Sequence record: LR756511.1
Direction: 5' to 3' (one strand)
DNA: 64,000 bases
Made by a program: the position numbers and the translations under genes. Numbering within the stretch: position 1 is the first letter of the stretch; the number at the start of each line of letters is the position of its first letter. The notes below the pieces were generated by a model, which searched no databases, was not told the origin of the DNA, and saw nothing but the letters and a program-made list of their open reading frames with translations. This document shows, piece after piece, positions 13,210 through 64,000 of the stretch.

Positions 13210-14118
13210 TTAGTAGTCTTCATCTTCGTCTTCATCCTCATCGAAGTCTTCATCATCCTCATCAATATCCTCTTCCTCATCTTCGTCTTCATCGTCATCA
13301 ACAGGAAAACGATCATCCACCGAAGACATGGAAGACGGAGTAGGCGCCGCTGGAGGCGGGGAAGCTGGGGTATAGCTGGTTGGCGTAGTCTTATACAACT
13401 GCGCCACAAGCTCACCATCCATCTCGCCCACAACCGTATACTTACAGGTGCGACACTTCGTAAACTTTTCCTCAGAAGGAACGCTAACAACGTCCATCGG
13501 ATTCACTTCGACAATCATAATATGACCTTCCCCACGGTGGAAATCGGTCACATATTCGATAGCTCCGACGTGATAACCAGACGAACATTCCGTGCGCCAA
13601 TCATCGTCCACTTCGTTACGTTCCATCGTAGGAGTGTCACCGATCATATTACGGGTAGTGCCCGAATGCCAATCCATATAATCGGGACGAACCGACTTAT
13701 ACGCCAAAAAGCAACCATTCTCCGTAATAGGCAAGTTACGGTGAACAAGGAAGGAATAAAGTTCCTGCACCGCATGACGAGAGGTATTCTGCATCAGGTT
13801 ATCGAGGAACTTAACCATCGAATCGAAGGGGAACCCTTCACGCATCAAACTAAGGATGCGACGGGTGAGGCTGTTATCAAGCGACCGTCCCTTATAGGCG
13901 AGAACGCCCGCTTCAACCTTAATGTTGCCACCAGCGAAACGCTCGATACTCTTGGGGATATTACCCAGGCGTTCGATTTCCGCTCCATCCTTGCGGGAGA
14001 TAGCTTCCTTCACGCGCTCGTAATTGGGATTACTCTTGGCAAACGAGTAAGGCTTACCGTTGACGAACACGGTAACATTGCCAGAATCGGTAAAGACGCA
14101 GCTGAACGGAATAGACAT
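13210..14118 (-). CDS. rIIB: T4 rIIB-like protein with acidic C-terminal tail
   Basis: FLDNLMQN.S..AV.ELY.FL...LPITENG.FLAYK.V, C..GYHVG, VNPMDVVSVP; start reassigned to ATG 14118 behind AGGAG. Confidence 0.9.
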   Translation of the reverse strand: MSIPFSCVFTDSGNVTVFVNGKPYSFAKSNPNYERVKEAISRKDGAEIERLGNIPKSIERFAGGNIKVEAGVLAYKGRSLDNSLTRRILSLMREGFPFDSMVKFLDNLMQNTSRHAVQELYSFLVHRNLPITENGCFLAYKSVRPDYMDWHSGTTRNMIGDTPTMERNEVDDDWRTECSSGYHVGAIEYVTDFHRGEGHIMIVEVNPMDVVSVPSEEKFTKCRTCKYTVVGEMDGELVAQLYKTTPTSYTPASPPPAAPTPSSMSSVDDRFPVDDDEDEDEEEDIDEDDEDFDEDEDEDEDY

Positions 14119-54637: not shown

Positions 54638-55141
54638 TTAATTCTCCTTAATCGCCTTCGTCCAATAGGCGAATGAGTTTTCAGAAACTAAATTTTCCGT
54701 TTCGTGCAGTTCCAGCAAGAAATTATAAAGCCGTTGAGCAAGGTCTTCTCTTCCCAATAGCTTTAATGAAGTCAAGCAACGTGTAATGCGGAGCCAATTA
54801 TGATTAATCTGGTTCCAGCAATAACGCGCTCGATCTTCGAAATTTTCCGCTTTATAGACTTTCTGGCCATCTGTGTTAAGGCCAAGAAAGCGTAGGAAGC
54901 GGTGGAATGAGTACGAAAGGTTAGCCTGCAACGTTTCACTCTGTTTAAACAGACTGATTTCTTCGTCTGTTAGGAGTGGAGCGTCAGGATTAAAGTTGGA
55001 GGGTTCTTTAAGCGGGAACAGCCACTGCACCCACGAATGATCGAATTCCAGCCAGTCGTCATCTTCATCCTGAATCTGGAATAGATATCGTCCGTCGATA
55101 TCAGGGTGATACCCGCTATAGAAGTTACAGATTTCGCTCAT
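54638..55141 (-). CDS. OGFr_N (opioid growth factor receptor) domain protein
   Basis: LE..H.WVQWLFP...S.FNP.AP.L, F.RFL.FLG, NHN.LRITRCL.SL..LG. Confidence 0.88.
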   Translation of the reverse strand: MSEICNFYSGYHPDIDGRYLFQIQDEDDDWLEFDHSWVQWLFPLKEPSNFNPDAPLLTDEEISLFKQSETLQANLSYSFHRFLRFLGLNTDGQKVYKAENFEDRARYCWNQINHNWLRITRCLTSLKLLGREDLAQRLYNFLLELHETENLVSENSFAYWTKAIKEN

Positions 55142-57221: not shown

Positions 57222-57249
57222 ATCTTACTACGAATTCTCACTTTGTAAA
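57222..57249 (-). promoter_or_regulatory. Sigma70-like promoter
   Basis: TTTACA-N16-TAAGAT. Confidence 0.4.
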
Positions 57250-58220
57250 AACTTGTCACAGAAATTGTCAGCCAAGGCAAGAATCTCGTCGCCCTGATCC
57301 AACTTTTCTCTAAGGTAAGAAGGAAACACTTCTTCGCCACGGAGAGCGCCCAAGAGAGCGCCTACCATAGAACCGTTCGTGTCAGTATCACCGCCAGAGT
57401 AGATAACGTCAATCAGCGAATGATACTGGAATGGACTTCGCATAAAGAACGCATACGTGAATGGCAACGAATTATAGACATAACAAGTGCCACGCCCGTA
57501 TTCATTAATTATGTGTTTGTCGTCGTACAGTAGCTTCGGATTTTCGTAAAGAGGAATCAGCGTCTTAAGACGCTCCGTTAAATCGTCCCCAAGAGTATTG
57601 GAATAGTAAGACCGCCCAATCTCGCTAGCACGGACAATCTTTTTGACGAATGCCTTGGTATCGAATTTATGATATTCGTTTTCCAGGCATTCCGAGAGGG
57701 CCATCACATGAGCGAGACAGGAAGAAACGGCAACGCTAGTCTGATGAGTCATTGCCGTAAAATCAACACAAATCTTCACGAAATCATCGAATTTCTTCGT
57801 TAAAGCAAAATAAGCAGCGAGCGGCGCCGCCTTCATTACAGGGCCATTTCCAAGACCACGATTAATTGCCCCGTCAAAATCGCCAGCCTTAGACCAATGC
57901 GTTCCATCTTTAATCTTTTTGACAGCTTCCCTCGTTGTCGATCCCCACCCAGCAGTCGTATCATCATAAGCTTCGACGTGGTACTTGCCCACCTTTTCCA
58001 TATCAACGGCGCCAGCTTCTAAAATCGCTTTTGCAACCGCAATGGATAATTGGGTATCGTCCGTCCATGTGCCTAGCTTTTGGCGTCGTCCTCTTGTAAA
58101 ACTGCTTTTTCGTTTTAGCTTTTCTAATGATTCATAAGGCTTGGATTCAAAGGGCATACCGAGGGCATCCCCGATAGCCAATCCAAGGAACATGCCTCTA
58201 ATTTTCTCTTTGAGGTTCAT
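57228..58220 (-). CDS. ADP-ribosylglycohydrolase (ARH/DraG family)
   Basis: G.AIGDALG, WTDDTQL, GNGPVM..AP, GGDTDT..SM.GALLGA. Confidence 0.92.
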   Translation of the reverse strand: MNLKEKIRGMFLGLAIGDALGMPFESKPYESLEKLKRKSSFTRGRRQKLGTWTDDTQLSIAVAKAILEAGAVDMEKVGKYHVEAYDDTTAGWGSTTREAVKKIKDGTHWSKAGDFDGAINRGLGNGPVMKAAPLAAYFALTKKFDDFVKICVDFTAMTHQTSVAVSSCLAHVMALSECLENEYHKFDTKAFVKKIVRASEIGRSYYSNTLGDDLTERLKTLIPLYENPKLLYDDKHIINEYGRGTCYVYNSLPFTYAFFMRSPFQYHSLIDVIYSGGDTDTNGSMVGALLGALRGEEVFPSYLREKLDQGDEILALADNFCDKFLQSENS

Positions 58221-58492: not shown

Positions 58493-59005
58493 TTAGGAGA
58501 TAAGTATGTCCGCGTCTTTGAGTGCCTGTGTCAGTTTTATCAAGTGCTTACACATTCCAGGGAGTTCTTTTGGGTTTATTCGGTAAGCACCCTCGTATTT
58601 TGTGCGTTTCTTCCCTTGTAAAGAATGATCCAAGTGATCGTAATAATTAAACCGCCAGTAGAAATCGCCACACTCACAGCGAACCAACACATCATTCTTT
58701 GGCGATAACCGCTCCACGTAGAATGGAATGCCATCATCCGCCATCACTTCGACGGCATTTGCGGCTGGGCCATTGTGGTAGCGTACAGCTTTGAAAACGA
58801 TGATTGGGTTATATTCCCTATCTTCGTTCTGAGCTAAGCCTTTAAAGAACAGCGTCTTTACACCCTTAAAGGGGATTATAGACAACTGTGTTATACGTAT
58901 AGGATCAACCGCGTGCTGTCTCTTTGCAGTATTAGGAAATGCATCTACGGCTGAGTCATAAAGATCATTTAATGAAGATTCATTAAGCCATCCGCTAAAG
59001 TTCAT
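58493..59005 (-). CDS. SWIM-type Zn-finger-like phage protein
   Basis: V.CECGDF.....P....GMCKHL. Confidence 0.65.
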   Translation of the reverse strand: MNFSGWLNESSLNDLYDSAVDAFPNTAKRQHAVDPIRITQLSIIPFKGVKTLFFKGLAQNEDREYNPIIVFKAVRYHNGPAANAVEVMADDGIPFYVERLSPKNDVLVRCECGDFYWRFNYYDHLDHSLQGKKRTKYEGAYRINPKELPGMCKHLIKLTQALKDADILIS

Positions 59006-59425: not shown

Positions 59426-59650
59426 TCACACTTCGGCATATTTGTAGTCATCTGGCTCTATGTAGGATGATACTGGCTTCATCATACCATTTAAAACGTT
59501 GAGAACATCAGTTGTAGAAACTTCTGATTGGTTGCTGCGGTAGCAAGTCATTTTCACTTCTTCTGCAACTTGATCCCGCACACGCTTCAAAATAATGTCT
59601 AATAAATCGGAAGCTTCTGGTTGCCAAGTTATTTTATCGGTTAGCTTCAT
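59426..59650 (-). CDS. Hypothetical protein, paralog of 59013-59297
   Basis: Shared motif as above. Confidence 0.55.
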   Translation of the reverse strand: MKLTDKITWQPEASDLLDIILKRVRDQVAEEVKMTCYRSNQSEVSTTDVLNVLNGMMKPVSSYIEPDDYKYAEV

Positions 59651-60224
59651 TGGCTATTTCCGCCTTAACTCTCTTGAGCCATTTGATCCCAAATTCCTTC
59701 TTTGTCACTCCCTCAATCGAATACCCGTCACGGTCTAACTTGCCTAGAGGGAAATAACGAACGAACATCTTACCCCAATGCACAGCCTTCTGCAACTGAT
59801 CTAGACGATAATAATTAATTGCAAGACGGATTCGACAATCACTCCGTAAAGCCGTCATTTGGGGACGACTCTCATTGCAAACGATAAACCTCTTCATTTC
59901 TAGAATGTCATGATAAAGCTTAATAGCTTTCTTTACGTCTTTCCTTGTGCCATAACAAAGGGCACCAGCTAAATGCCACAGCACCAAAGGACACAAAGAT
60001 TTAGTAATGGCGTGAGCTTTACGAGCGTAGCGTAAAGCAATTTTGTATTTTTTTTGTTCGTAATAAGCGGAAGACAATTGAGCGTAAAGCCAATGTGCAT
60101 CCCAATCGCCAGGAGGCAATAGCTTTAGTTCTTTTTTTGCTAAAGCTATTGCCTCCTTGAAGCGATTACGGAGAATTAGGCTGTTGATTCGTTTGCCAGC
60201 AGCCTTTTGTTCTTTGCTAAGCAT
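59634..60224 (-). CDS. TPR-repeat protein
   Basis: LSSAYYEQKKYKIALRYARKA repeats; start reassigned to ATG 60224. Confidence 0.65.
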   Translation of the reverse strand: MLSKEQKAAGKRINSLILRNRFKEAIALAKKELKLLPPGDWDAHWLYAQLSSAYYEQKKYKIALRYARKAHAITKSLCPLVLWHLAGALCYGTRKDVKKAIKLYHDILEMKRFIVCNESRPQMTALRSDCRIRLAINYYRLDQLQKAVHWGKMFVRYFPLGKLDRDGYSIEGVTKKEFGIKWLKRVKAEIANEANR

Positions 60225-60885
60225 ACTTCTTAACTTTAATTTGATTGCTGTCGCCTTCGATTTCGAAAGCAACTCCCTGAATACCAACCTTCGTAAAGGT
60301 CGCACGACCAATGCGGACGTTATCATAACGATCCACATGATAATCTGCAACAGGAGTTGCCCCAGCAGGCAACGACGGAGCAAGAACCAATTCCGAAGGA
60401 TCGCTTTGGAAAACGACAACTGGATCGCTGTCCTTCAAGCCAAGCTGACGAACCAGCTTATTCGGAATGCAAAGACGGTCGGTAGTATCGAACTTATAAA
60501 TTACCGAACCGTCTGCGGCAACGTCCACACCATCATCAATGGTTGAGATGGATGCGGCGGGAAGTGCCGCAACAGGCGGAACGGTAGCAATCGCCGCCAC
60601 GGGCGCACTGACAGGCTGACCACTATATGTGGACGGGTCCGCAGAAAGAGGATGATAAATCCACGGTTGAGGATTCACATTTGGCAAATTGGCAAGCGTT
60701 CGGTTATAGCTGAACATATTGCCGTTATCGAACATTCGGTGAACTTCCTTCTTCACTTCGAAATGCTGAACTCGCTGCTTGGATCGCTTACGCACAGCCA
60801 TCGTCACATCCCAAGCGGTAAACATGGTGTCAGCGTTGACAAATTCATTCACCGCGTCTTCAATCTCGTTCAGATACATGCACAT
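60217..60885 (-). CDS. Hypothetical protein with C-terminal AbrB-like domain
   Basis: D...RLCIPNKLVRQLGLK..D.V; start reassigned to ATG 60885 behind GGGAG. Confidence 0.6.
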   Translation of the reverse strand: MCMYLNEIEDAVNEFVNADTMFTAWDVTMAVRKRSKQRVQHFEVKKEVHRMFDNGNMFSYNRTLANLPNVNPQPWIYHPLSADPSTYSGQPVSAPVAAIATVPPVAALPAASISTIDDGVDVAADGSVIYKFDTTDRLCIPNKLVRQLGLKDSDPVVVFQSDPSELVLAPSLPAGATPVADYHVDRYDNVRIGRATFTKVGIQGVAFEIEGDSNQIKVKKYA

Positions 60886-60910
60886 AGTTTTCTCCCTTGT
60901 TAAAAAGTTG

Positions 60911-62059
60911 TTACTCGTCTCGTAAGCCCATAAAGTACGGGAATCGTGGCTTGCCATCAGGCGTCAAATTGAAATATTTGACCGTGCCAGTCTTCCCGAT
61001 ATAGTCATCTTTTTTCTGTAGCATTTGCTTGCAGAAGTCACGGGTGCCCTTAATATTACAATCGAAGCTAGTGGAACCATCTGCAAATGCACTACCATCA
61101 AGTTTCTTGCATGTAATATTGCCAGCACCACCACTACGATTACCAACACCTTCTGTAACTCCTACGATCAAATACTCGCCATCCTTGAATTCTTTGTATT
61201 TCAGAAGGCTTTTCGTTCGTTTCTGCTCATACTTGGCGTCGAAACGAACCATTGCCCCCTCGTAGCCTTCTTCAACAAATTGCTCATAAGCTCCAACGAT
61301 ATCGTTTTCACACATTGCTTCGTGTGTTTCAACCAGTTGGAGACAGCCACGCTTTTTAGCAAAACCAAGAACCTTCTTTAGTTCTGCATGGCGGGCGCTA
61401 AACACATCCTCCCAAAACGGGAAGTCATAAATGTGATATTCAATATGCGCAGCCGCTTCCTGTAGGTCTTCCTTCGTCGGCTTTGTCTTCTTTGCTAACG
61501 AGCAAATTTTATTGAAATCGTTAGCAAACTTGTCTGCATACACTTCGCCGTCGAAGATATACTTTGGGTTATACCTAAAGAGCGGTTTTAGAGCTTCGTA
61601 AATGTGAGGAATAGATTTATATTCCTTGCCGTTACGAGTCCACAAACCATCTTTATTGGCAATAAGCCGCAAGCCATCAAGCTTCGGTTGCACCCAAAGA
61701 GAACCATCGCCCAAAGCTTTTAATGCTTCATCCTTGTAATCTTGCCATGATTTCGCAAGCATTGGCTCAAAGAAAGAAGCATTATCAATATCATTAATAT
61801 CGGCCTTATAGCCTTTGTCGAGCTTCTTTTGATACTCGGATTTCGCTTCAGACATAGCTTGTTGTTCGGCAGTCGTTGCATTTGCACGACCAATATTCTT
61901 ACTGCCGCAGACTGTCCATTCGGATGTTACGATTTCACCATCCATAATTCCTGAATGGGAGCGATGCTTGCCGCCATCGACTTCCTTTTCCCAAATCTGA
62001 ATTTTGCCATCAGAGCGGCGGCTATAAAGCGGTGGTAATTTCATATCTGATAACTCCAT
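60911..62059 (-). CDS. ATP-dependent DNA ligase with WGR-like N-terminal domain
   Basis: PMLAK, QPKLDG, FDGEVY, YHIYD, EGAMVR, LLKYKEF. Confidence 0.92.
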   Translation of the reverse strand: MELSDMKLPPLYSRRSDGKIQIWEKEVDGGKHRSHSGIMDGEIVTSEWTVCGSKNIGRANATTAEQQAMSEAKSEYQKKLDKGYKADINDIDNASFFEPMLAKSWQDYKDEALKALGDGSLWVQPKLDGLRLIANKDGLWTRNGKEYKSIPHIYEALKPLFRYNPKYIFDGEVYADKFANDFNKICSLAKKTKPTKEDLQEAAAHIEYHIYDFPFWEDVFSARHAELKKVLGFAKKRGCLQLVETHEAMCENDIVGAYEQFVEEGYEGAMVRFDAKYEQKRTKSLLKYKEFKDGEYLIVGVTEGVGNRSGGAGNITCKKLDGSAFADGSTSFDCNIKGTRDFCKQMLQKKDDYIGKTGTVKYFNLTPDGKPRFPYFMGLRDE

Positions 62060-62247
62060 TCTTGTTCAGCGGCCATTTCGAACACCTTTTCTCCATATTT
62101 CTCGTAAGCTATGGAGTGCTTTGCGCAAAATCGACAAGCGTTATAACGCTGGATAACTCCCGTAGGCTTTCCTAAGAAATTGTCACGCACGCGAAACCAG
62201 CAGTCATATAACTCGTCAAAGTCCAAAAAGCATATCTCACACTTCAT
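62041..62247 (-). CDS. Small Cys-containing protein
   Basis: CEIC...CRFC. Confidence 0.45.
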   Translation of the reverse strand: MKCEICFLDFDELYDCWFRVRDNFLGKPTGVIQRYNACRFCAKHSIAYEKYGEKVFEMAAEQEWSYQI

Positions 62248-62446
62248 TTAGGACTTCCTCTCGCATTTCGTACAGCTCATCCTCACAGCGGATTCTGTTT
62301 AGCCTATTACAGACCCTTTGAACCTTGGCCGAATCTCTAGAGATTACATTATCTCGATAGAGATTCGGCCAAGACTCTATGTAATCCACCAACGGATACC
62401 ATTGTCCGCGAGCGGATCGCCACCATAGCTTATACAACTTTATCAT
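62237..62446 (-). CDS. Hypothetical protein
   Basis: ATGA overlap with the PARP stop. Confidence 0.5.
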   Translation of the reverse strand: MIKLYKLWWRSARGQWYPLVDYIESWPNLYRDNVISRDSAKVQRVCNRLNRIRCEDELYEMREEVLNEV

Positions 62447-64000
62447 GTGTCAAATTCGCAAAGGTAGCGAAGCTGATTTTGCCTACCATCGTAAATAATC
62501 CATTCATTATTCACGACGCCAGATCGTCCAGCCTTACCGAACACGCAATGGTGTCCCTTTGGAGGCGAAGCATAACCGCCAGAAGAAGGAGCTACATAAG
62601 GGCTTCCAAGGACCACATCGCAAGCAAACATGAAGGCGGCACGACCACGCACGTTGCCATCACCAGACGACCAATAAGAGCCGCGAAGTGACGTATAACC
62701 AGCAGATTTCCGCCAATCGTCAGCGAAGTAGCAGCCTGGACCGAACATCGCACCAGTAATTACAACGCCGACTAGTTGCTTGGGTAGTCGCAAACCTTCT
62801 CTTAAAATACCACGGACATTAACAGAACGGGTGCCGTGGAATAGGAGAGCGGTATTTGTGCTGTGATAACGCTTTAAGAGAGTGTTGTCATCCAAGTCAT
62901 TTCTTTCTGTCGGCTGGTAGGGCGGTCGTTCCGTAATGCGGGGCTTCTCATCAATAATACCGCCCTGAGTCTTTTCAACCTTTTCCTGATCGCCGTTACG
63001 GGCAACCTTCCACATATTCTTGATCTTCATGTTGCCAACGCCCGCATGACGATTGGCACTGGCCTTCGGCCACCAATTATAGAGGAATTTTCCAAGAGCC
63101 GTGCTAGGATCAATCCATTCCATCTTAAGTGGCATTCCATCAAACGGATCGCTTGCATCTGTATCCGAATCCGTCGTAACATATAGAGCAGATTCGAATG
63201 CGTCAAGGTCCGCAAGCCAAGCGAGAATGTTATCCTTATTTAAAAGCCAATCCTTCGGCGGGCAATGTAGAGCCTTCTTTTTGGGAATGCGGCTATACAT
63301 GACGCGAGTAAGCTGATTAAGCTCATTGTCAGCAACTTGATCGTCAACATTATCGCCAACCTTAATGAGCCGCTTCTGCGCTTCCACAAGAATATCGCGG
63401 GCTTCATTAATTGACTTTTGAGTTGGAAGGCAAGCGTCGGCCATTGACCCGCGAGTATAAGAAACCGTAGCCACGTTTAAATCTTTCATTAAACGCAGCG
63501 TATTGGTGTCAATGGTAATGGAAGGCTTTTTAGCGCCATTGCCATTCATGACTGCTGGCTTTGCCGTAGTCTTTGCGCCTTCGTTAAGCTTAATCGTCTT
63601 CGCGTCAGGAAGACCCGTTGAGCGAGTTGCCATAGGACGCACTAAATAGCAGTCCTTATTTGGCTTGGCTTGAAGCGTGCGAATGCCCGCTACAGTCGTC
63701 CATTGCCCACGCTTATCATTCTTTTCGTGAAGTTGCTTGGCGAATTCATACTGAGCATCGGATTCGCTGCTGCATTCAACAAATTGGAATTGAGGTGAAG
63801 AGGCACCTGTGCGACCCCACTCAAAATAAGCATACCACTTCTTAGTCTTGCGGTTTTGGACTACCGCACCGTGATAATACTTGTTACTATCCTTGCCTGA
63901 CTGATCGAAGCAGCCAAGGTCGGCAATCTTACAGTTTTCGAATTGACCATCTTCTGTTGCTGGCGGTCCAAAACACTGAAAATCTTCGGGAGTAGAACTG
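62443..64000 (-). CDS. Poly(ADP-ribose) polymerase (WGR - helical - catalytic), 5' truncated by window end
   Basis: Frame open to base 63999; WGR motif SNKYY...EWGRTG; catalytic LFHGT (H), FGPGCYFAD (Y), NNEWIIYD (E). Confidence 0.9.
   Translation of the reverse strand, partial: SSTPEDFQCFGPPATEDGQFENCKIADLGCFDQSGKDSNKYYHGAVVQNRKTKKWYAYFEWGRTGASSPQFQFVECSSESDAQYEFAKQLHEKNDKRGQWTTVAGIRTLQAKPNKDCYLVRPMATRSTGLPDAKTIKLNEGAKTTAKPAVMNGNGAKKPSITIDTNTLRLMKDLNVATVSYTRGSMADACLPTQKSINEARDILVEAQKRLIKVGDNVDDQVADNELNQLTRVMYSRIPKKKALHCPPKDWLLNKDNILAWLADLDAFESALYVTTDSDTDASDPFDGMPLKMEWIDPSTALGKFLYNWWPKASANRHAGVGNMKIKNMWKVARNGDQEKVEKTQGGIIDEKPRITERPPYQPTERNDLDDNTLLKRYHSTNTALLFHGTRSVNVRGILREGLRLPKQLVGVVITGAMFGPGCYFADDWRKSAGYTSLRGSYWSSGDGNVRGRAAFMFACDVVLGSPYVAPSSGGYASPPKGHHCVFGKAGRSGVVNNEWIIYDGRQNQLRYLCEFDT

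What the first reader, a model, noticed from the sequence alone, without database searches (positions are those of the whole stretch)
62443..64000. Phage-encoded PARP1-like enzyme with WGR domain and intact H-Y-E triad
Translating beyond the called start shows the frame continues to the window edge and encodes a WGR domain, then a helical region and a catalytic domain with H, Y and E. In PARP1/2 and bacterial PARPs this architecture means DNA-break-activated polymer synthesis. Most characterised phage ADP-ribosyltransferases (T4 Alt/Mod) are mono-transferases of the R-S-E clade.
Basis: partly seen in the sequence, partly recalled or inferred. Interest (0 to 1): 0.75.

Follow-up and report, generated by a model that had tools for sequence, protein, structure and literature searches.

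The report
Huge-phage PARP with WGR domain
A 595-kb uncultured phage encodes a full PARP2-like enzyme (break-sensing WGR domain, helical brake, catalytic domain with H-Y-E), clustered with a DNA ligase, a DNA-binding partner and enzymes that remove ADP-ribose; phage PARPs were already catalogued, but none has been tested.

Summary
The minus-strand frame 62443-63999 is open to the window edge. In the source record (LR756511.1, 595-kb uncultured phage) it starts 32 nt further on and gives a 529-aa protein. Pfam finds WGR (E 4e-9) and the PARP catalytic domain (E 3e-19). The structure model (pLDDT 90, pTM 0.85) matches DNA-bound human PARP1/PARP2 WGR-HD-ART. H399, Y435 and E510 align with PARP1 H862/Y896/E988 and are invariant in 61 relatives.

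It has no zinc fingers or BRCT, so it is PARP2/3-like or bacterial-PARP-like, not PARP1-like.

Context supports a break-gated, reversible ADP-ribosylation module:
- An ATP-dependent DNA ligase and an ADP-ribosylglycohydrolase lie downstream on the same strand.
- A microbial-type PARG lies elsewhere in the same genome.
- Across 102 related loci, ligases, ADP-ribose erasers and above all a winged-helix/AbrB protein ("X") recur next to the gene.

Activation by DNA breaks and polymer synthesis remain inferred.

Phage PARPs are already catalogued computationally, so this is a new member of a known kind.

An unexpected side result: the sister clade lies in Planctomycetes. There the PARP gene sits directly after a type XIII retron whose reverse transcriptase carries domain X at its N-terminus.

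The parts
62443..64000 (-). WGR-HD-ART PARP gene. The stop codon is at 62443-62445. Codons 12-529 lie in the window; the ATG lies 32 nt beyond the window end in LR756511.1.
63667..63927 (-). WGR domain (aa 36-122). The W72-G73-R74 motif is at 63811-63819. N50, K51 and Y53 are invariant or nearly invariant.
   Evidence: Pfam PF05406 E 4.5e-9; beta-strands 36-122 in the model; conservation; codons
63508..63666 (-). Conserved post-WGR segment (DCYLVRPMATRSTGLPDAKTIK, aa 127-148), followed by a Lys/Ala/Thr-rich linker (about aa 150-175) that the model leaves disordered.
   Evidence: invariant columns; pLDDT about 50 for aa 151-170
63163..63507 (-). Helical domain (aa 176-290), the structural counterpart of the PARP regulatory/autoinhibitory HD. 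Pfam PARP_reg does not recognise it.
   Evidence: helices 176-196, 205-225, 229-248, 266-290; PARP1 HD+ART crystal structures align over about 400 columns at TMt 0.70-0.74; no PF02877 hit
62446..63135 (-). ART (PARP catalytic) domain, aa 300-529. H399 is at 62836-62838, Y435 at 62728-62730 and E510 at 62503-62505.
   Evidence: PF00644 E 2.8e-19; alignment to PARP1; invariance; codons
62237..62446 (-). 69-aa ORF whose ATG overlaps the PARP stop codon. Function unknown.
   Evidence: no Pfam or PHROG hit
62041..62247 (-). 68-aa Cys-rich ORF (CxxC ... CxxC) that overlaps both of its neighbours. Function unknown.
   Evidence: no Pfam or PHROG hit
60911..62059 (-). ATP-dependent DNA ligase (adenylation and OB domains), 382 aa.
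   Evidence: PF01068 E 2.3e-19, PF14743 E 1.9e-8; the orthologue sits in the same position in L013 (71% id), L040 and L079
60217..60957 (-). 'X' protein: an N-terminal winged-helix domain, a low-complexity linker and a C-terminal AbrB/MazE-like domain. The true start is probably M25 at 60885. It is the most constant neighbour of this PARP family.
   Evidence: model with pLDDT above 90 in both domains; winged-helix folds top the fold search, all non-significant; AbrB profile hits; linkage in 37 of 53 loci
59634..60419 (-). TPR-repeat protein. The listed TTG start overlaps the X gene, so the real start is probably further downstream.
   Evidence: TPR Pfam hits; conserved in L009, L013, L017, L018
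57228..58220 (-). ADP-ribosylglycohydrolase (ARH/DraG family), 330 aa.
   Evidence: PF03747 E 1.3e-52; PDB relatives are DraG and ARH3; orthologues lie downstream of PARP in L009, L013, L015, L017, L018, L032

Best explanation
The gene encodes an active PARP-family ADP-ribosyltransferase of the WGR-HD-ART type, comparable to PARP2/3, Herpetosiphon HaPARP and C. difficile CdPARP, and it is native to a lineage of huge phages. The most likely mechanism is as follows. The helical domain keeps the NAD+ pocket closed. When the WGR domain binds a nucleic-acid break, most plausibly a 5'-phosphorylated nick or end in phage DNA, that block is released. The enzyme then ADP-ribosylates itself and nearby targets, probably with chains. 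The prime candidate target or adaptor is the conserved winged-helix/AbrB DNA-binding protein X, encoded 1.5 kb downstream. The mark is read out or cleared around nick sealing by the co-encoded ATP-dependent DNA ligase, and it is erased by the cluster's ADP-ribosylglycohydrolase and by the microbial-type PARG encoded elsewhere in the genome. What is shown: the domain architecture, the catalytic and WGR residues, the fold, the gene neighbourhood and its conservation. What is inferred: catalytic activity, gating by breaks, polymer rather than mono transfer, the targets, and a role in repair.
For: Architecture and residues:
- Pfam WGR and PARP domains.
- H399/Y435/E510 align with the PARP1 triad and are invariant in 61 relatives.
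- W72-G73-R74 is invariant among close relatives.
- AF2 model with pLDDT 89.8 and pTM 0.85.
- Best PDB fold matches are DNA-break-bound PARP1 WGR-HD-CAT (7s6h_D E 6.5e-24; 4opx_C TMt 0.73) and PARP2/HPF1 (6x0l_P).

Operon-like packing on one strand, with overlapping stop and start codons from PARP through two small ORFs to the ligase.

Synteny (PARP, ligase, X, TPR, ARH) is conserved in a 543-kb relative at 77% identity, and partly in L009, L015, L017, L018.

Linkage across 102 non-redundant loci:
- X lies downstream in 37 of 53 loci.
- A DNA or RNA ligase is present in 19 of 41.
- An ADPr eraser is present in 14 of 36.
- Relatives at 30-47% identity sit next to an NAD-dependent DNA ligase, X, NADAR, ARH or NAMPT.

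PARG in the same genome: tblastn E 8e-47 to the PARG linked to PARP in L010, PF10021 E 1.8e-12, GGG...QEE motif present.

Literature:
- HaPARP and CdPARP show DNA-dependent automodification that is reversed by their PARGs (PMC5966428, PMC8120803).
- PARP2/3 are activated by 5'-phosphorylated breaks through WGR-HD allostery (PMC4081085, PMC8190142).
Against: - No activity data exist for any phage PARP.
- Pfam does not recognise the helical domain as PARP_reg.
- H-Y-E is necessary but not sufficient for chain synthesis: PARP3 is a mono-transferase (established knowledge).
- The acceptor loop is short, and tankyrase aligns contiguously over aa 378-516.
- Ligase linkage is found in under half of the loci, and one viral clade (L023-L031) shows no accessory gene within 6 kb other than a NADAR gene in L023/L024.
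- In this genome the PARG lies 189-405 kb from the PARP gene.
- The ligase has no recognisable PAR-binding module.
- The coordinates of the model could not be exported, so H-Y-E pocket geometry is inferred from superposition, not measured.
Confidence: 0.55

Rival explanations
1. A host-takeover or counter-defence transferase. The enzyme would (poly)ADP-ribosylate host proteins such as RNA polymerase or defence factors, as T4 Alt/ModA/ModB do, and the WGR/HD unit would merely restrict its activity to DNA-bound contexts.
For: Iyer et al. proposed that phage PARPs act like other phage ARTs but add chains (PMC7824862). ARTs and ARH domains are common in jumbo phages (PMC9503650). The cluster lies among sigma-factor, ClpX and regulatory genes.
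Against: The full nucleic-acid-sensing regulatory apparatus is retained under strong conservation. The recurrent neighbours are ligases and a DNA-binding protein, not head or packaging genes as for injected ARTs. Self-encoded erasers fit a regulated cycle better than an irreversible attack on the host.
Confidence: 0.18
2. A conflict module tied to type XIII retrons. The PARP+X pair would be the phage counterpart of a Planctomycete retron effector pair. It could act as a decoy or antagonist of the host system, for example by sequestering msDNA or the retron partner proteins. Alternatively it could act as an NAD+-consuming superinfection-exclusion or abortive switch triggered by foreign DNA ends.
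For: Planctomycete homologues at 56-65% identity sit 20-50 nt downstream of a complete type XIII retron (HEAT/ARM, SWIM, RT; PADLOC E about 1e-155) in 7 loci from three families. The RT carries domain X at its N-terminus, 33-51% identical to the phage X. Those loci are flanked by ARH and Macro genes.
Against: The window contains no RT, SWIM or HEAT/ARM gene. In the tree the Planctomycete clade is nested among viral lineages, so the phage function probably came first. PARP+X linkage extends to distant relatives that have ligase neighbours and no retron. The phage ARH and the retron-linked ARH are only 23% identical. The host of this phage is unknown.
Confidence: 0.15
3. A nucleic-acid end modifier. 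The enzyme would ADP-ribosylate terminal phosphates of DNA or RNA breaks, as PARP2/3 can in vitro. This would cap or mark ends until the ligase and the erasers act.
For: PARP2/3 ADP-ribosylate 5'-phosphates at breaks (PMC5861426). The neighbours are DNA or RNA ligases, which act on the same 5'-P ends, together with NADAR, Macro or ARH erasers.
Against: No data distinguish protein acceptors from nucleic-acid acceptors. The conserved disordered Lys/Ser/Thr-rich linker and the X protein are plausible protein acceptors.
Confidence: 0.1
4. A cellular contaminant, a mis-binned gene or a decaying gene with no function in the phage.
For: The closest named cellular homologues are in Planctomycete MAGs.
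Against: The gene lies inside a 595-kb phage record with conserved synteny in other contigs of 370-590 kb, next to Portal_T4 and typical phage genes. Its GC content of 48% is close to the window's 43%, against 53-67% for the Planctomycete copies. The ORF is intact and all catalytic residues are invariant.
Confidence: 0.02

Closest known systems
Bacterial PARPs: Herpetosiphon aurantiacus HaPARP and Clostridioides difficile CD160 CdPARP
   Same: WGR, helical domain and ART, about 450-530 aa, with no zinc fingers or BRCT. H-Y-E triad. Pfam often misses the helical domain although models show it (PMC5966428). A cognate PARG and further hydrolases are encoded in the same genome (PMC8120803).
   Different: They share only family-level similarity. 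This protein belongs to a separate subfamily (82 clusters at E<=1e-30) with a conserved N-terminal extension and a DCYLVRPMATRSTGLPD segment after WGR. It is phage-encoded and has a conserved winged-helix/AbrB partner gene.
Human PARP2/PARP3 (and the WGR-HD-CAT core of PARP1)
   Same: The three-domain core superposes (TMt 0.65-0.73 for the full core). The WGR motif and the residues matching H862/Y896/E988 are conserved. The expected allosteric activation is by 5'-P breaks (PMC4081085, PMC8190142).
   Different: About 17-20% sequence identity. No PARP1 zinc fingers or BRCT. A short acceptor loop. No HPF1 or histones in the system. Activity is untested.
Previously catalogued phage and viral PARPs/PARTs (e.g. 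Xanthomonas phage XacN1 BBA65562.1, Klebsiella phage FBKp34, Bacteriophage sp. A0A8D9PE85, Bodo saltans virus A0A2H4UTL3)
   Same: Virus-encoded PARP catalytic domains, noted in surveys as possible poly-transferases or DNA-damage sensors (PMC7824862, PMC9503650, PMC11662467). Some are three-domain proteins.
   Different: XacN1, Xoo-sp13, FBKp34 and the Stenotrophomonas phages match only the last 135 aa, at 37-41% identity. None is described with the X partner, the ligase/ARH/PARG context or the retron-linked sister clade.
T4 Alt/ModA/ModB
   Same: Phage-encoded NAD+-dependent ADP-ribosyltransferases.
   Different: They belong to the R-S-E clade, are mono-transferases, have no WGR or HD, and target host proteins. 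This protein belongs to the H-Y-E clade.
Type XIII retrons (Mx162/Mx65/Ne144 class: RT + SWIM protein + WGR-like/HEAT-ARM protein; PMC7736814)
   Same: The sister clade of this PARP is encoded directly downstream of such retrons in Planctomycetes. The phage X protein shares its winged-helix domain with those RTs.
   Different: The phage locus has no RT, SWIM or HEAT/ARM gene, so it is not a retron. PARP is not part of the published type XIII definition.

Membership tests
PARP/ARTD family (H-Y-E clade of ADP-ribosyltransferases) | PARP catalytic (ART) domain | tested here: met
   PF00644 E 2.8e-19, 69.9 bits against a cut-off of 26.7. PARP1 catalytic-domain crystal structures match at TMt 0.70-0.74.
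PARP/ARTD family (H-Y-E clade of ADP-ribosyltransferases) | His-Tyr-Glu triad in register with PARP1 H862/Y896/E988 | tested here: met
   H399, Y435 and E510 align, are invariant in 61 sequences, and their codons were checked. Three-dimensional pocket distances were not measured because no coordinates were available.
DNA-dependent PARPs (PARP1-3, bacterial PARPs) | WGR domain with the W-G-R motif | tested here: met
   PF05406 E 4.5e-9. W72, G73 and R74 are invariant in 27 close relatives.
DNA-dependent PARPs (PARP1-3, bacterial PARPs) | Helical regulatory domain (PARP_reg/HD) between WGR and ART, by sequence profile | tested here: not met
   No PF02877 hit at E<=1. The same is reported for many bacterial PARPs (PMC5966428). 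More distant relatives (P0182, P0275) do carry PF02877.
DNA-dependent PARPs (PARP1-3, bacterial PARPs) | Helical regulatory domain, by fold | tested here: met
   Helices at aa 176-290. HD+ART structures align over about 400 columns, and WGR-HD-CAT chains over about 540.
DNA-dependent PARPs (PARP1-3, bacterial PARPs) | Activity stimulated by DNA breaks | not testable with these tools
   Requires an in vitro assay with and without nicked or 5'-P DNA.
DNA-dependent PARPs (PARP1-3, bacterial PARPs) | Synthesis of poly(ADP-ribose) chains | not testable with these tools
   Indirect support only: a microbial-type PARG in the same genome and one linked to PARP in L010.
PARP1 specifically | N-terminal zinc fingers Zn1-Zn3 and BRCT | tested here: not met
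   Full-length 529 aa with only 35 aa before WGR. No such Pfam domains.
Type XIII retron | Retron RT with associated SWIM and HEAT/ARM genes at the locus | tested here: not met
   No PADLOC RT, SWIM or HEAT hit for the phage PARP, for the gene upstream of it or for the ARH. tblastn finds only the X-domain similarity in the window.
T4 Alt/Mod-type phage ARTs (R-S-E clade) | Arg-Ser-Glu catalytic motif and Alt/VIP2 or Mod fold | tested here: not met
   The catalytic residues are H-Y-E and the best matches are all PARPs or tankyrases.

The most novel reading that the evidence does not exclude
WGR-PARP plus the winged-helix protein X would form a mobile two-part module that originated in huge phages. 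It would have been captured once by Planctomycetes and wired into type XIII retrons, with X fused to the reverse transcriptase and PARP encoded immediately downstream, flanked by ARH and Macro genes. PARP would then be a previously unrecognised, nucleic-acid-gated retron effector. Its WGR domain would read the msDNA or foreign DNA ends, and X would be the adaptor that tethers PARP to its DNA or RT platform. In the phage, the same pair would run a break-signalling cycle on phage DNA.
Probability: 0.35. Interest if true: 0.8.

Novelty: new member of a known kind. Interest (0 to 1): 0.55.

Why it matters
No virus-encoded PARP has been characterised biochemically, and evidence for PAR metabolism in prokaryotic systems is thin. 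This family offers a compact PARP (529 aa, confidently modelled) together with its own ligase, erasers and a candidate partner. That makes it a simple system for studying WGR/HD allostery outside chromatin. It would also show what poly- or mono-ADP-ribosylation does during infection by a 595-kb phage. The side finding that the sister clade is attached to type XIII retrons, whose effector mechanism is unknown, turns an open question in retron biology into a testable one.

Tried and rejected
- PADLOC has no model that matches the PARP, the upstream 522-aa protein or the ARH. PHROGs gives only 'polymerase' phrog_23333.
- The upstream 522-aa gene is conserved with the PARP gene in L013 (51% identity) but has no Pfam, PHROG or PADLOC hit.
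- I tested whether the phage ARH and the retron-linked Planctomycete ARH were transferred together with PARP. They are only 23% identical, so this was rejected.
- I compared the small 170-aa ORF (58493-59005), which has a CxC...CxH motif, with the retron SWIM protein. There is no significant similarity and no Pfam SWIM hit.
A reciprocal scan for X in viral contigs only re-found two known loci.
- The accession is not cited in the searchable literature, and the huge-phage paper does not mention PARP, NAD or Planctomycetes.
- Model coordinates are not exposed to scripts, so H-Y-E distances could not be measured.
- The fold search for X gave only non-significant winged-helix matches (best E 0.065).
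- Promoter and terminator scans around the gene were at background level.
- The host of the phage could not be established. The Planctomycete link rests on this one gene family.
Full report
**1. What is in the sequence**

The minus-strand frame from 63999 down to the stop codon at 62443-62445 is open for 518 codons. The ORF list gives a GTG start at 63642 only because ORFs that run off the window are not listed.

The window is 100% identical to LR756511.1, an unannotated 595,163-bp 'uncultured phage' record, at positions 124001-188000. Reading on in that record shows an ATG 32 nt past the window edge and a 529-aa protein. The window therefore lacks only 11 residues. It contains no N stretches, has 43% GC, and 74 of its 86 larger ORFs lie on the minus strand.

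**2. Domain identity**

- Pfam finds WGR at aa 44-107 (E 4.5e-9) and the PARP catalytic domain at aa 380-500 (E 2.8e-19), both above the curated cut-offs. PARP_reg is not found.
- Against PDB sequences the best matches are human PARP1 WGR-HD-CAT constructs (E 2e-14), followed by tankyrases and PARP2. The printed alignment puts H399, Y435 and E510 opposite the PARP1 motifs WHGSR, GIYFAD and YNEYIVYD.
- In a 61-sequence alignment that reaches 26% identity, H399, G400, Y435, K442, Y446 and E510 are invariant.
- Among 27 closer relatives the W72-G73-R74 motif and N50/K51/Y53 are invariant.
- An AlphaFold2 model built on that alignment is confident: pLDDT 89.8 and pTM 0.85. Only a linker at about aa 151-170 and a loop at 421-426 are poorly defined.
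- Its best PDB fold matches are the WGR-HD-CAT chains of PARP1 bound to a double-strand break (7s6h_D E 6.5e-24; 4opx_C TMt 0.73) and PARP2/HPF1 on a broken nucleosome. HD+ART crystal structures align over about 400 columns.

So the helical domain exists at the level of fold although the sequence profile misses it. The same has been reported for many bacterial PARPs (PMC5966428). There are only 35 residues before WGR and no zinc fingers or BRCT. The protein is therefore PARP2/3-like or bacterial-PARP-like, not PARP1-like. I could not export model coordinates, so placement of H, Y and E in one pocket is inferred from the superposition and was not measured.

**3. The neighbourhood in the window**

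All of the following lie on the same strand, downstream of the PARP gene:

- a 69-aa ORF whose ATG overlaps the PARP stop codon;
- a 68-aa Cys-rich ORF;
- an ATP-dependent DNA ligase (60911-62059; PF01068 and PF14743);
- a 246-aa (probably 222-aa) protein that I call X (60217-60957);
- a TPR protein;
- several small ORFs;
- an ADP-ribosylglycohydrolase (57228-58220; PF03747 E 1.3e-52), whose solved relatives are DraG and ARH3.

Upstream lies a conserved 522-aa protein with no recognisable domain.

Elsewhere in the same genome (592381-592989) there is a microbial-type PARG. It is 49% identical (E 8e-47) to a PARG that lies 7 kb from the PARP gene in a related 669-kb contig. It matches PF10021 at E 1.8e-12 and has the GGG...QEE motif. 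The phage thus encodes a writer and two kinds of eraser.

**4. Relatives**

The word-indexed protein search found 898 homologues; the 120 listed are 60-100% identical over the matched region, nearly all of it full-length. The exhaustive representative search found 82 clusters at E<=1e-30, with full-length relatives down to about 27% identity.

- Contigs of 370-670 kb with phage gene content carry the gene.
- IMG/VR holds 17 full-length copies.
- BFVD holds three-domain viral PARPs, including one from 'Bacteriophage sp.'.
- A 543-kb relative keeps the order PARP, small ORF, DNA ligase, X, TPR, ARH, with a T4-type portal gene nearby.
- In the annotated phage collection, only the catalytic domain matches known phages (XacN1, Xoo-sp13, FBKp34 and others, 37-41% over 135 aa).

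**5. Linkage statistics**

I collected 102 non-redundant loci from genome, viral, assembly and metagenome collections. I searched them by tblastn at E<=1e-4, so the counts below are lower bounds.

| Neighbour of the PARP gene | Loci with it | Loci eligible (by flank length) |
|---|---|---|
| X gene downstream (median offset 1.6 kb) | 37 | 53 non-bacterial loci with >=4 kb downstream |
| A ligase (ATP-DNA, NAD-DNA or RNA ligase) | 19 | 41 with >=4 kb on both sides |
| An eraser (ARH, PARG, Macro or NADAR) | 14 | 36 with >=6 kb on both sides |
| At least one of the above | 26 | 36 with >=6 kb on both sides |

The pattern holds in distant relatives:

- P0125 (47% identity) lies between NAMPT and X, ARH, RNA ligase.
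- P0182 (33% identity; WGR-PARP_reg-PARP by Pfam) is divergently adjacent to an NAD-dependent DNA ligase, with X just downstream.
- P0275, on a 397-kb contig, has an NAD-dependent ligase, X and NADAR nearby.

One viral clade (L023-L031) shows none of these within 6 kb except a NADAR gene in L023/L024.

**6. The X protein**

Its N-terminal roughly 85 residues are conserved (MFTA.DVT..VR...H.EVK..VH..F..G.M..Y.R....P.WVYH....D...Y) and have no Pfam, PHROG or PDB sequence match. The model gives a helix-strand-helix-helix-strand-strand winged-helix topology with pLDDT above 90. A second confident beta-rich domain follows. Profile searches place that second domain in the AbrB/SpoVT/MazE family. Fold search returns winged-helix proteins only, none of them significant.

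**7. The Planctomycete connection**

All seven relatives in the species-representative genome set are from Planctomycetota: Gemmatales, Pirellulaceae and Planctomycetaceae, at 56-65% identity. In seven loci the PARP gene follows a reverse-transcriptase gene by about 20-50 nt.

PADLOC identifies the three upstream genes as a complete type XIII retron: HEAT-ARM_XIII at E 1e-136, SWIM_XIII at E 4e-154 and RT_XIII at E 9e-155. ARH and Macro genes flank these loci. The published definition of type XIII (RT, SWIM protein, WGR-like/HEAT-ARM protein) does not include a PARP (PMC7736814).

The first roughly 110 residues of these RTs lie outside the RT profile, and they are domain X, 33-51% identical to the phage X proteins. 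PARP and X are therefore linked in two independent ways: as neighbours in phages, and as an X-RT fusion next to PARP in bacteria.

A quick maximum-likelihood tree of 83 sequences puts the eight labelled Planctomycete sequences in one clade (SH-aLRT 98). That clade is nested among lineages whose labelled members are all viral. This favours one phage-to-bacterium transfer. However, many rows have no label and the tree is a short search. Each copy matches the GC content of its own genome (48% against 43% here; 53-67% in Planctomycetes), so no transfer is recent. The phage ARH and the retron-linked ARH are only 23% identical and were not co-transferred.

**8. Interpretation**

*Shown:*
- a full-length, conserved WGR-HD-ART protein with intact catalytic and WGR residues;
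- its residence in huge-phage genomes;
- its conserved association with a DNA-binding partner, with nick-sealing enzymes and with ADP-ribose erasers.

*Inferred from the biochemistry of PARP1-3, HaPARP and CdPARP* (PMC4081085, PMC8190142, PMC5966428, PMC8120803):
- the helical domain blocks NAD+ access until WGR binds a break, most plausibly a ligatable 5'-P nick;
- the enzyme then modifies itself and nearby proteins, or DNA ends (PMC5861426);
- ARH and PARG reset the system.

The presence of a PARG argues for chains, but PARP3 shows that H-Y-E alone is no proof of chain synthesis. I put 0.55 on this break-gated, reversible signalling or repair reading. Host-protein modification, a retron-related conflict role and end-capping of nucleic acids are the live alternatives. 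The retron-linked sister clade keeps the conflict reading open.

**9. Novelty**

Phage PARPs have been noted in comparative surveys. They have been suggested to add polymers or to sense DNA damage (PMC7824862, PMC9503650, PMC11662467), and three-domain versions are already in UniProt. None has been assayed. The finding as stated is therefore a new member of a known kind.

I did not find the following in the searchable literature: the conserved X partner, the breadth of the ligase and eraser linkage, and the type XIII retron + PARP arrangement in Planctomycetes.

Noticed in passing
L003:1924-9611; L005:386-9641; L014:1-9213; also L006, L007, L008, L071: In Planctomycete genomes the PARP homologue is the last gene of a complete type XIII retron locus (HEAT/ARM, SWIM, RT, PARP), with ARH and Macro genes flanking it. 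PARP is not part of the published type XIII retron definition (PMC7736814).
   Followed up: partly
window 60562-60852 (-); L005:6030-6389; L014:5037-5396: An uncharacterised winged-helix domain of about 85 aa ('X') is shared between the phage protein downstream of PARP and the N-terminus of the Planctomycete type XIII retron RT (33-51% identity). It has no Pfam, PHROG or PDB sequence match.
   Followed up: partly
LR756511.1 592381-592989 (L012:1995-2798), outside the window: The same phage genome encodes a microbial-type PARG (PF10021 E 1.8e-12; GGG...QEE motif), far from the PARP cluster.
   Followed up: yes
L011:8001-10013 (P0117), P0120: Some chromosomal Planctomycete PARPs carry an N-terminal Lys/Ala-rich, histone-H1-like tail of about 130 aa and are not next to a retron. 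The tail is reminiscent of the basic N-terminal region of PARP2.
   Followed up: no
L007:6571-7848: In one Pirellulaceae locus an HTH/rve integrase (IS-like) gene sits between the retron RT and a PARP that lacks its first 126 residues. The system appears to be disrupted.
   Followed up: no
window 54638-55141 (-): A 167-aa phage protein matches the conserved region of the opioid growth factor receptor (PF04664, E 5.5e-26). The same domain occurs at the corresponding position in the related contig L009.
   Followed up: no
window 58493-59005 (-): A 170-aa ORF between the TPR and ARH genes has a CxC...CxH motif resembling a SWIM zinc finger and matches phrog_18980 (unknown function). It has no significant similarity to the retron SWIM protein and no Pfam SWIM hit.
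   Followed up: yes
L001:4093-5661 (-), i.e. just beyond the window end: A 522-aa protein with no recognisable domain lies immediately upstream of the PARP gene and is conserved in that position in L013 (51% identity).
   Followed up: partly
P0014 / L018:6001-7623: One phage homologue contains an exact internal duplication of about 18 residues (GGLGKMTIKNLWRVQRRGD) in the ART domain. This is either a real tandem duplication or an assembly artefact.
   Followed up: no
L035:68-1552; L037:11542-11973 and 13298-14101: Distant PARP loci on phage-like contigs also carry NAMPT (NAD+ salvage), NADAR, R2K ATP-grasp and YpsA-like genes. This points to a wider NAD+/ADP-ribose gene neighbourhood.
   Followed up: no
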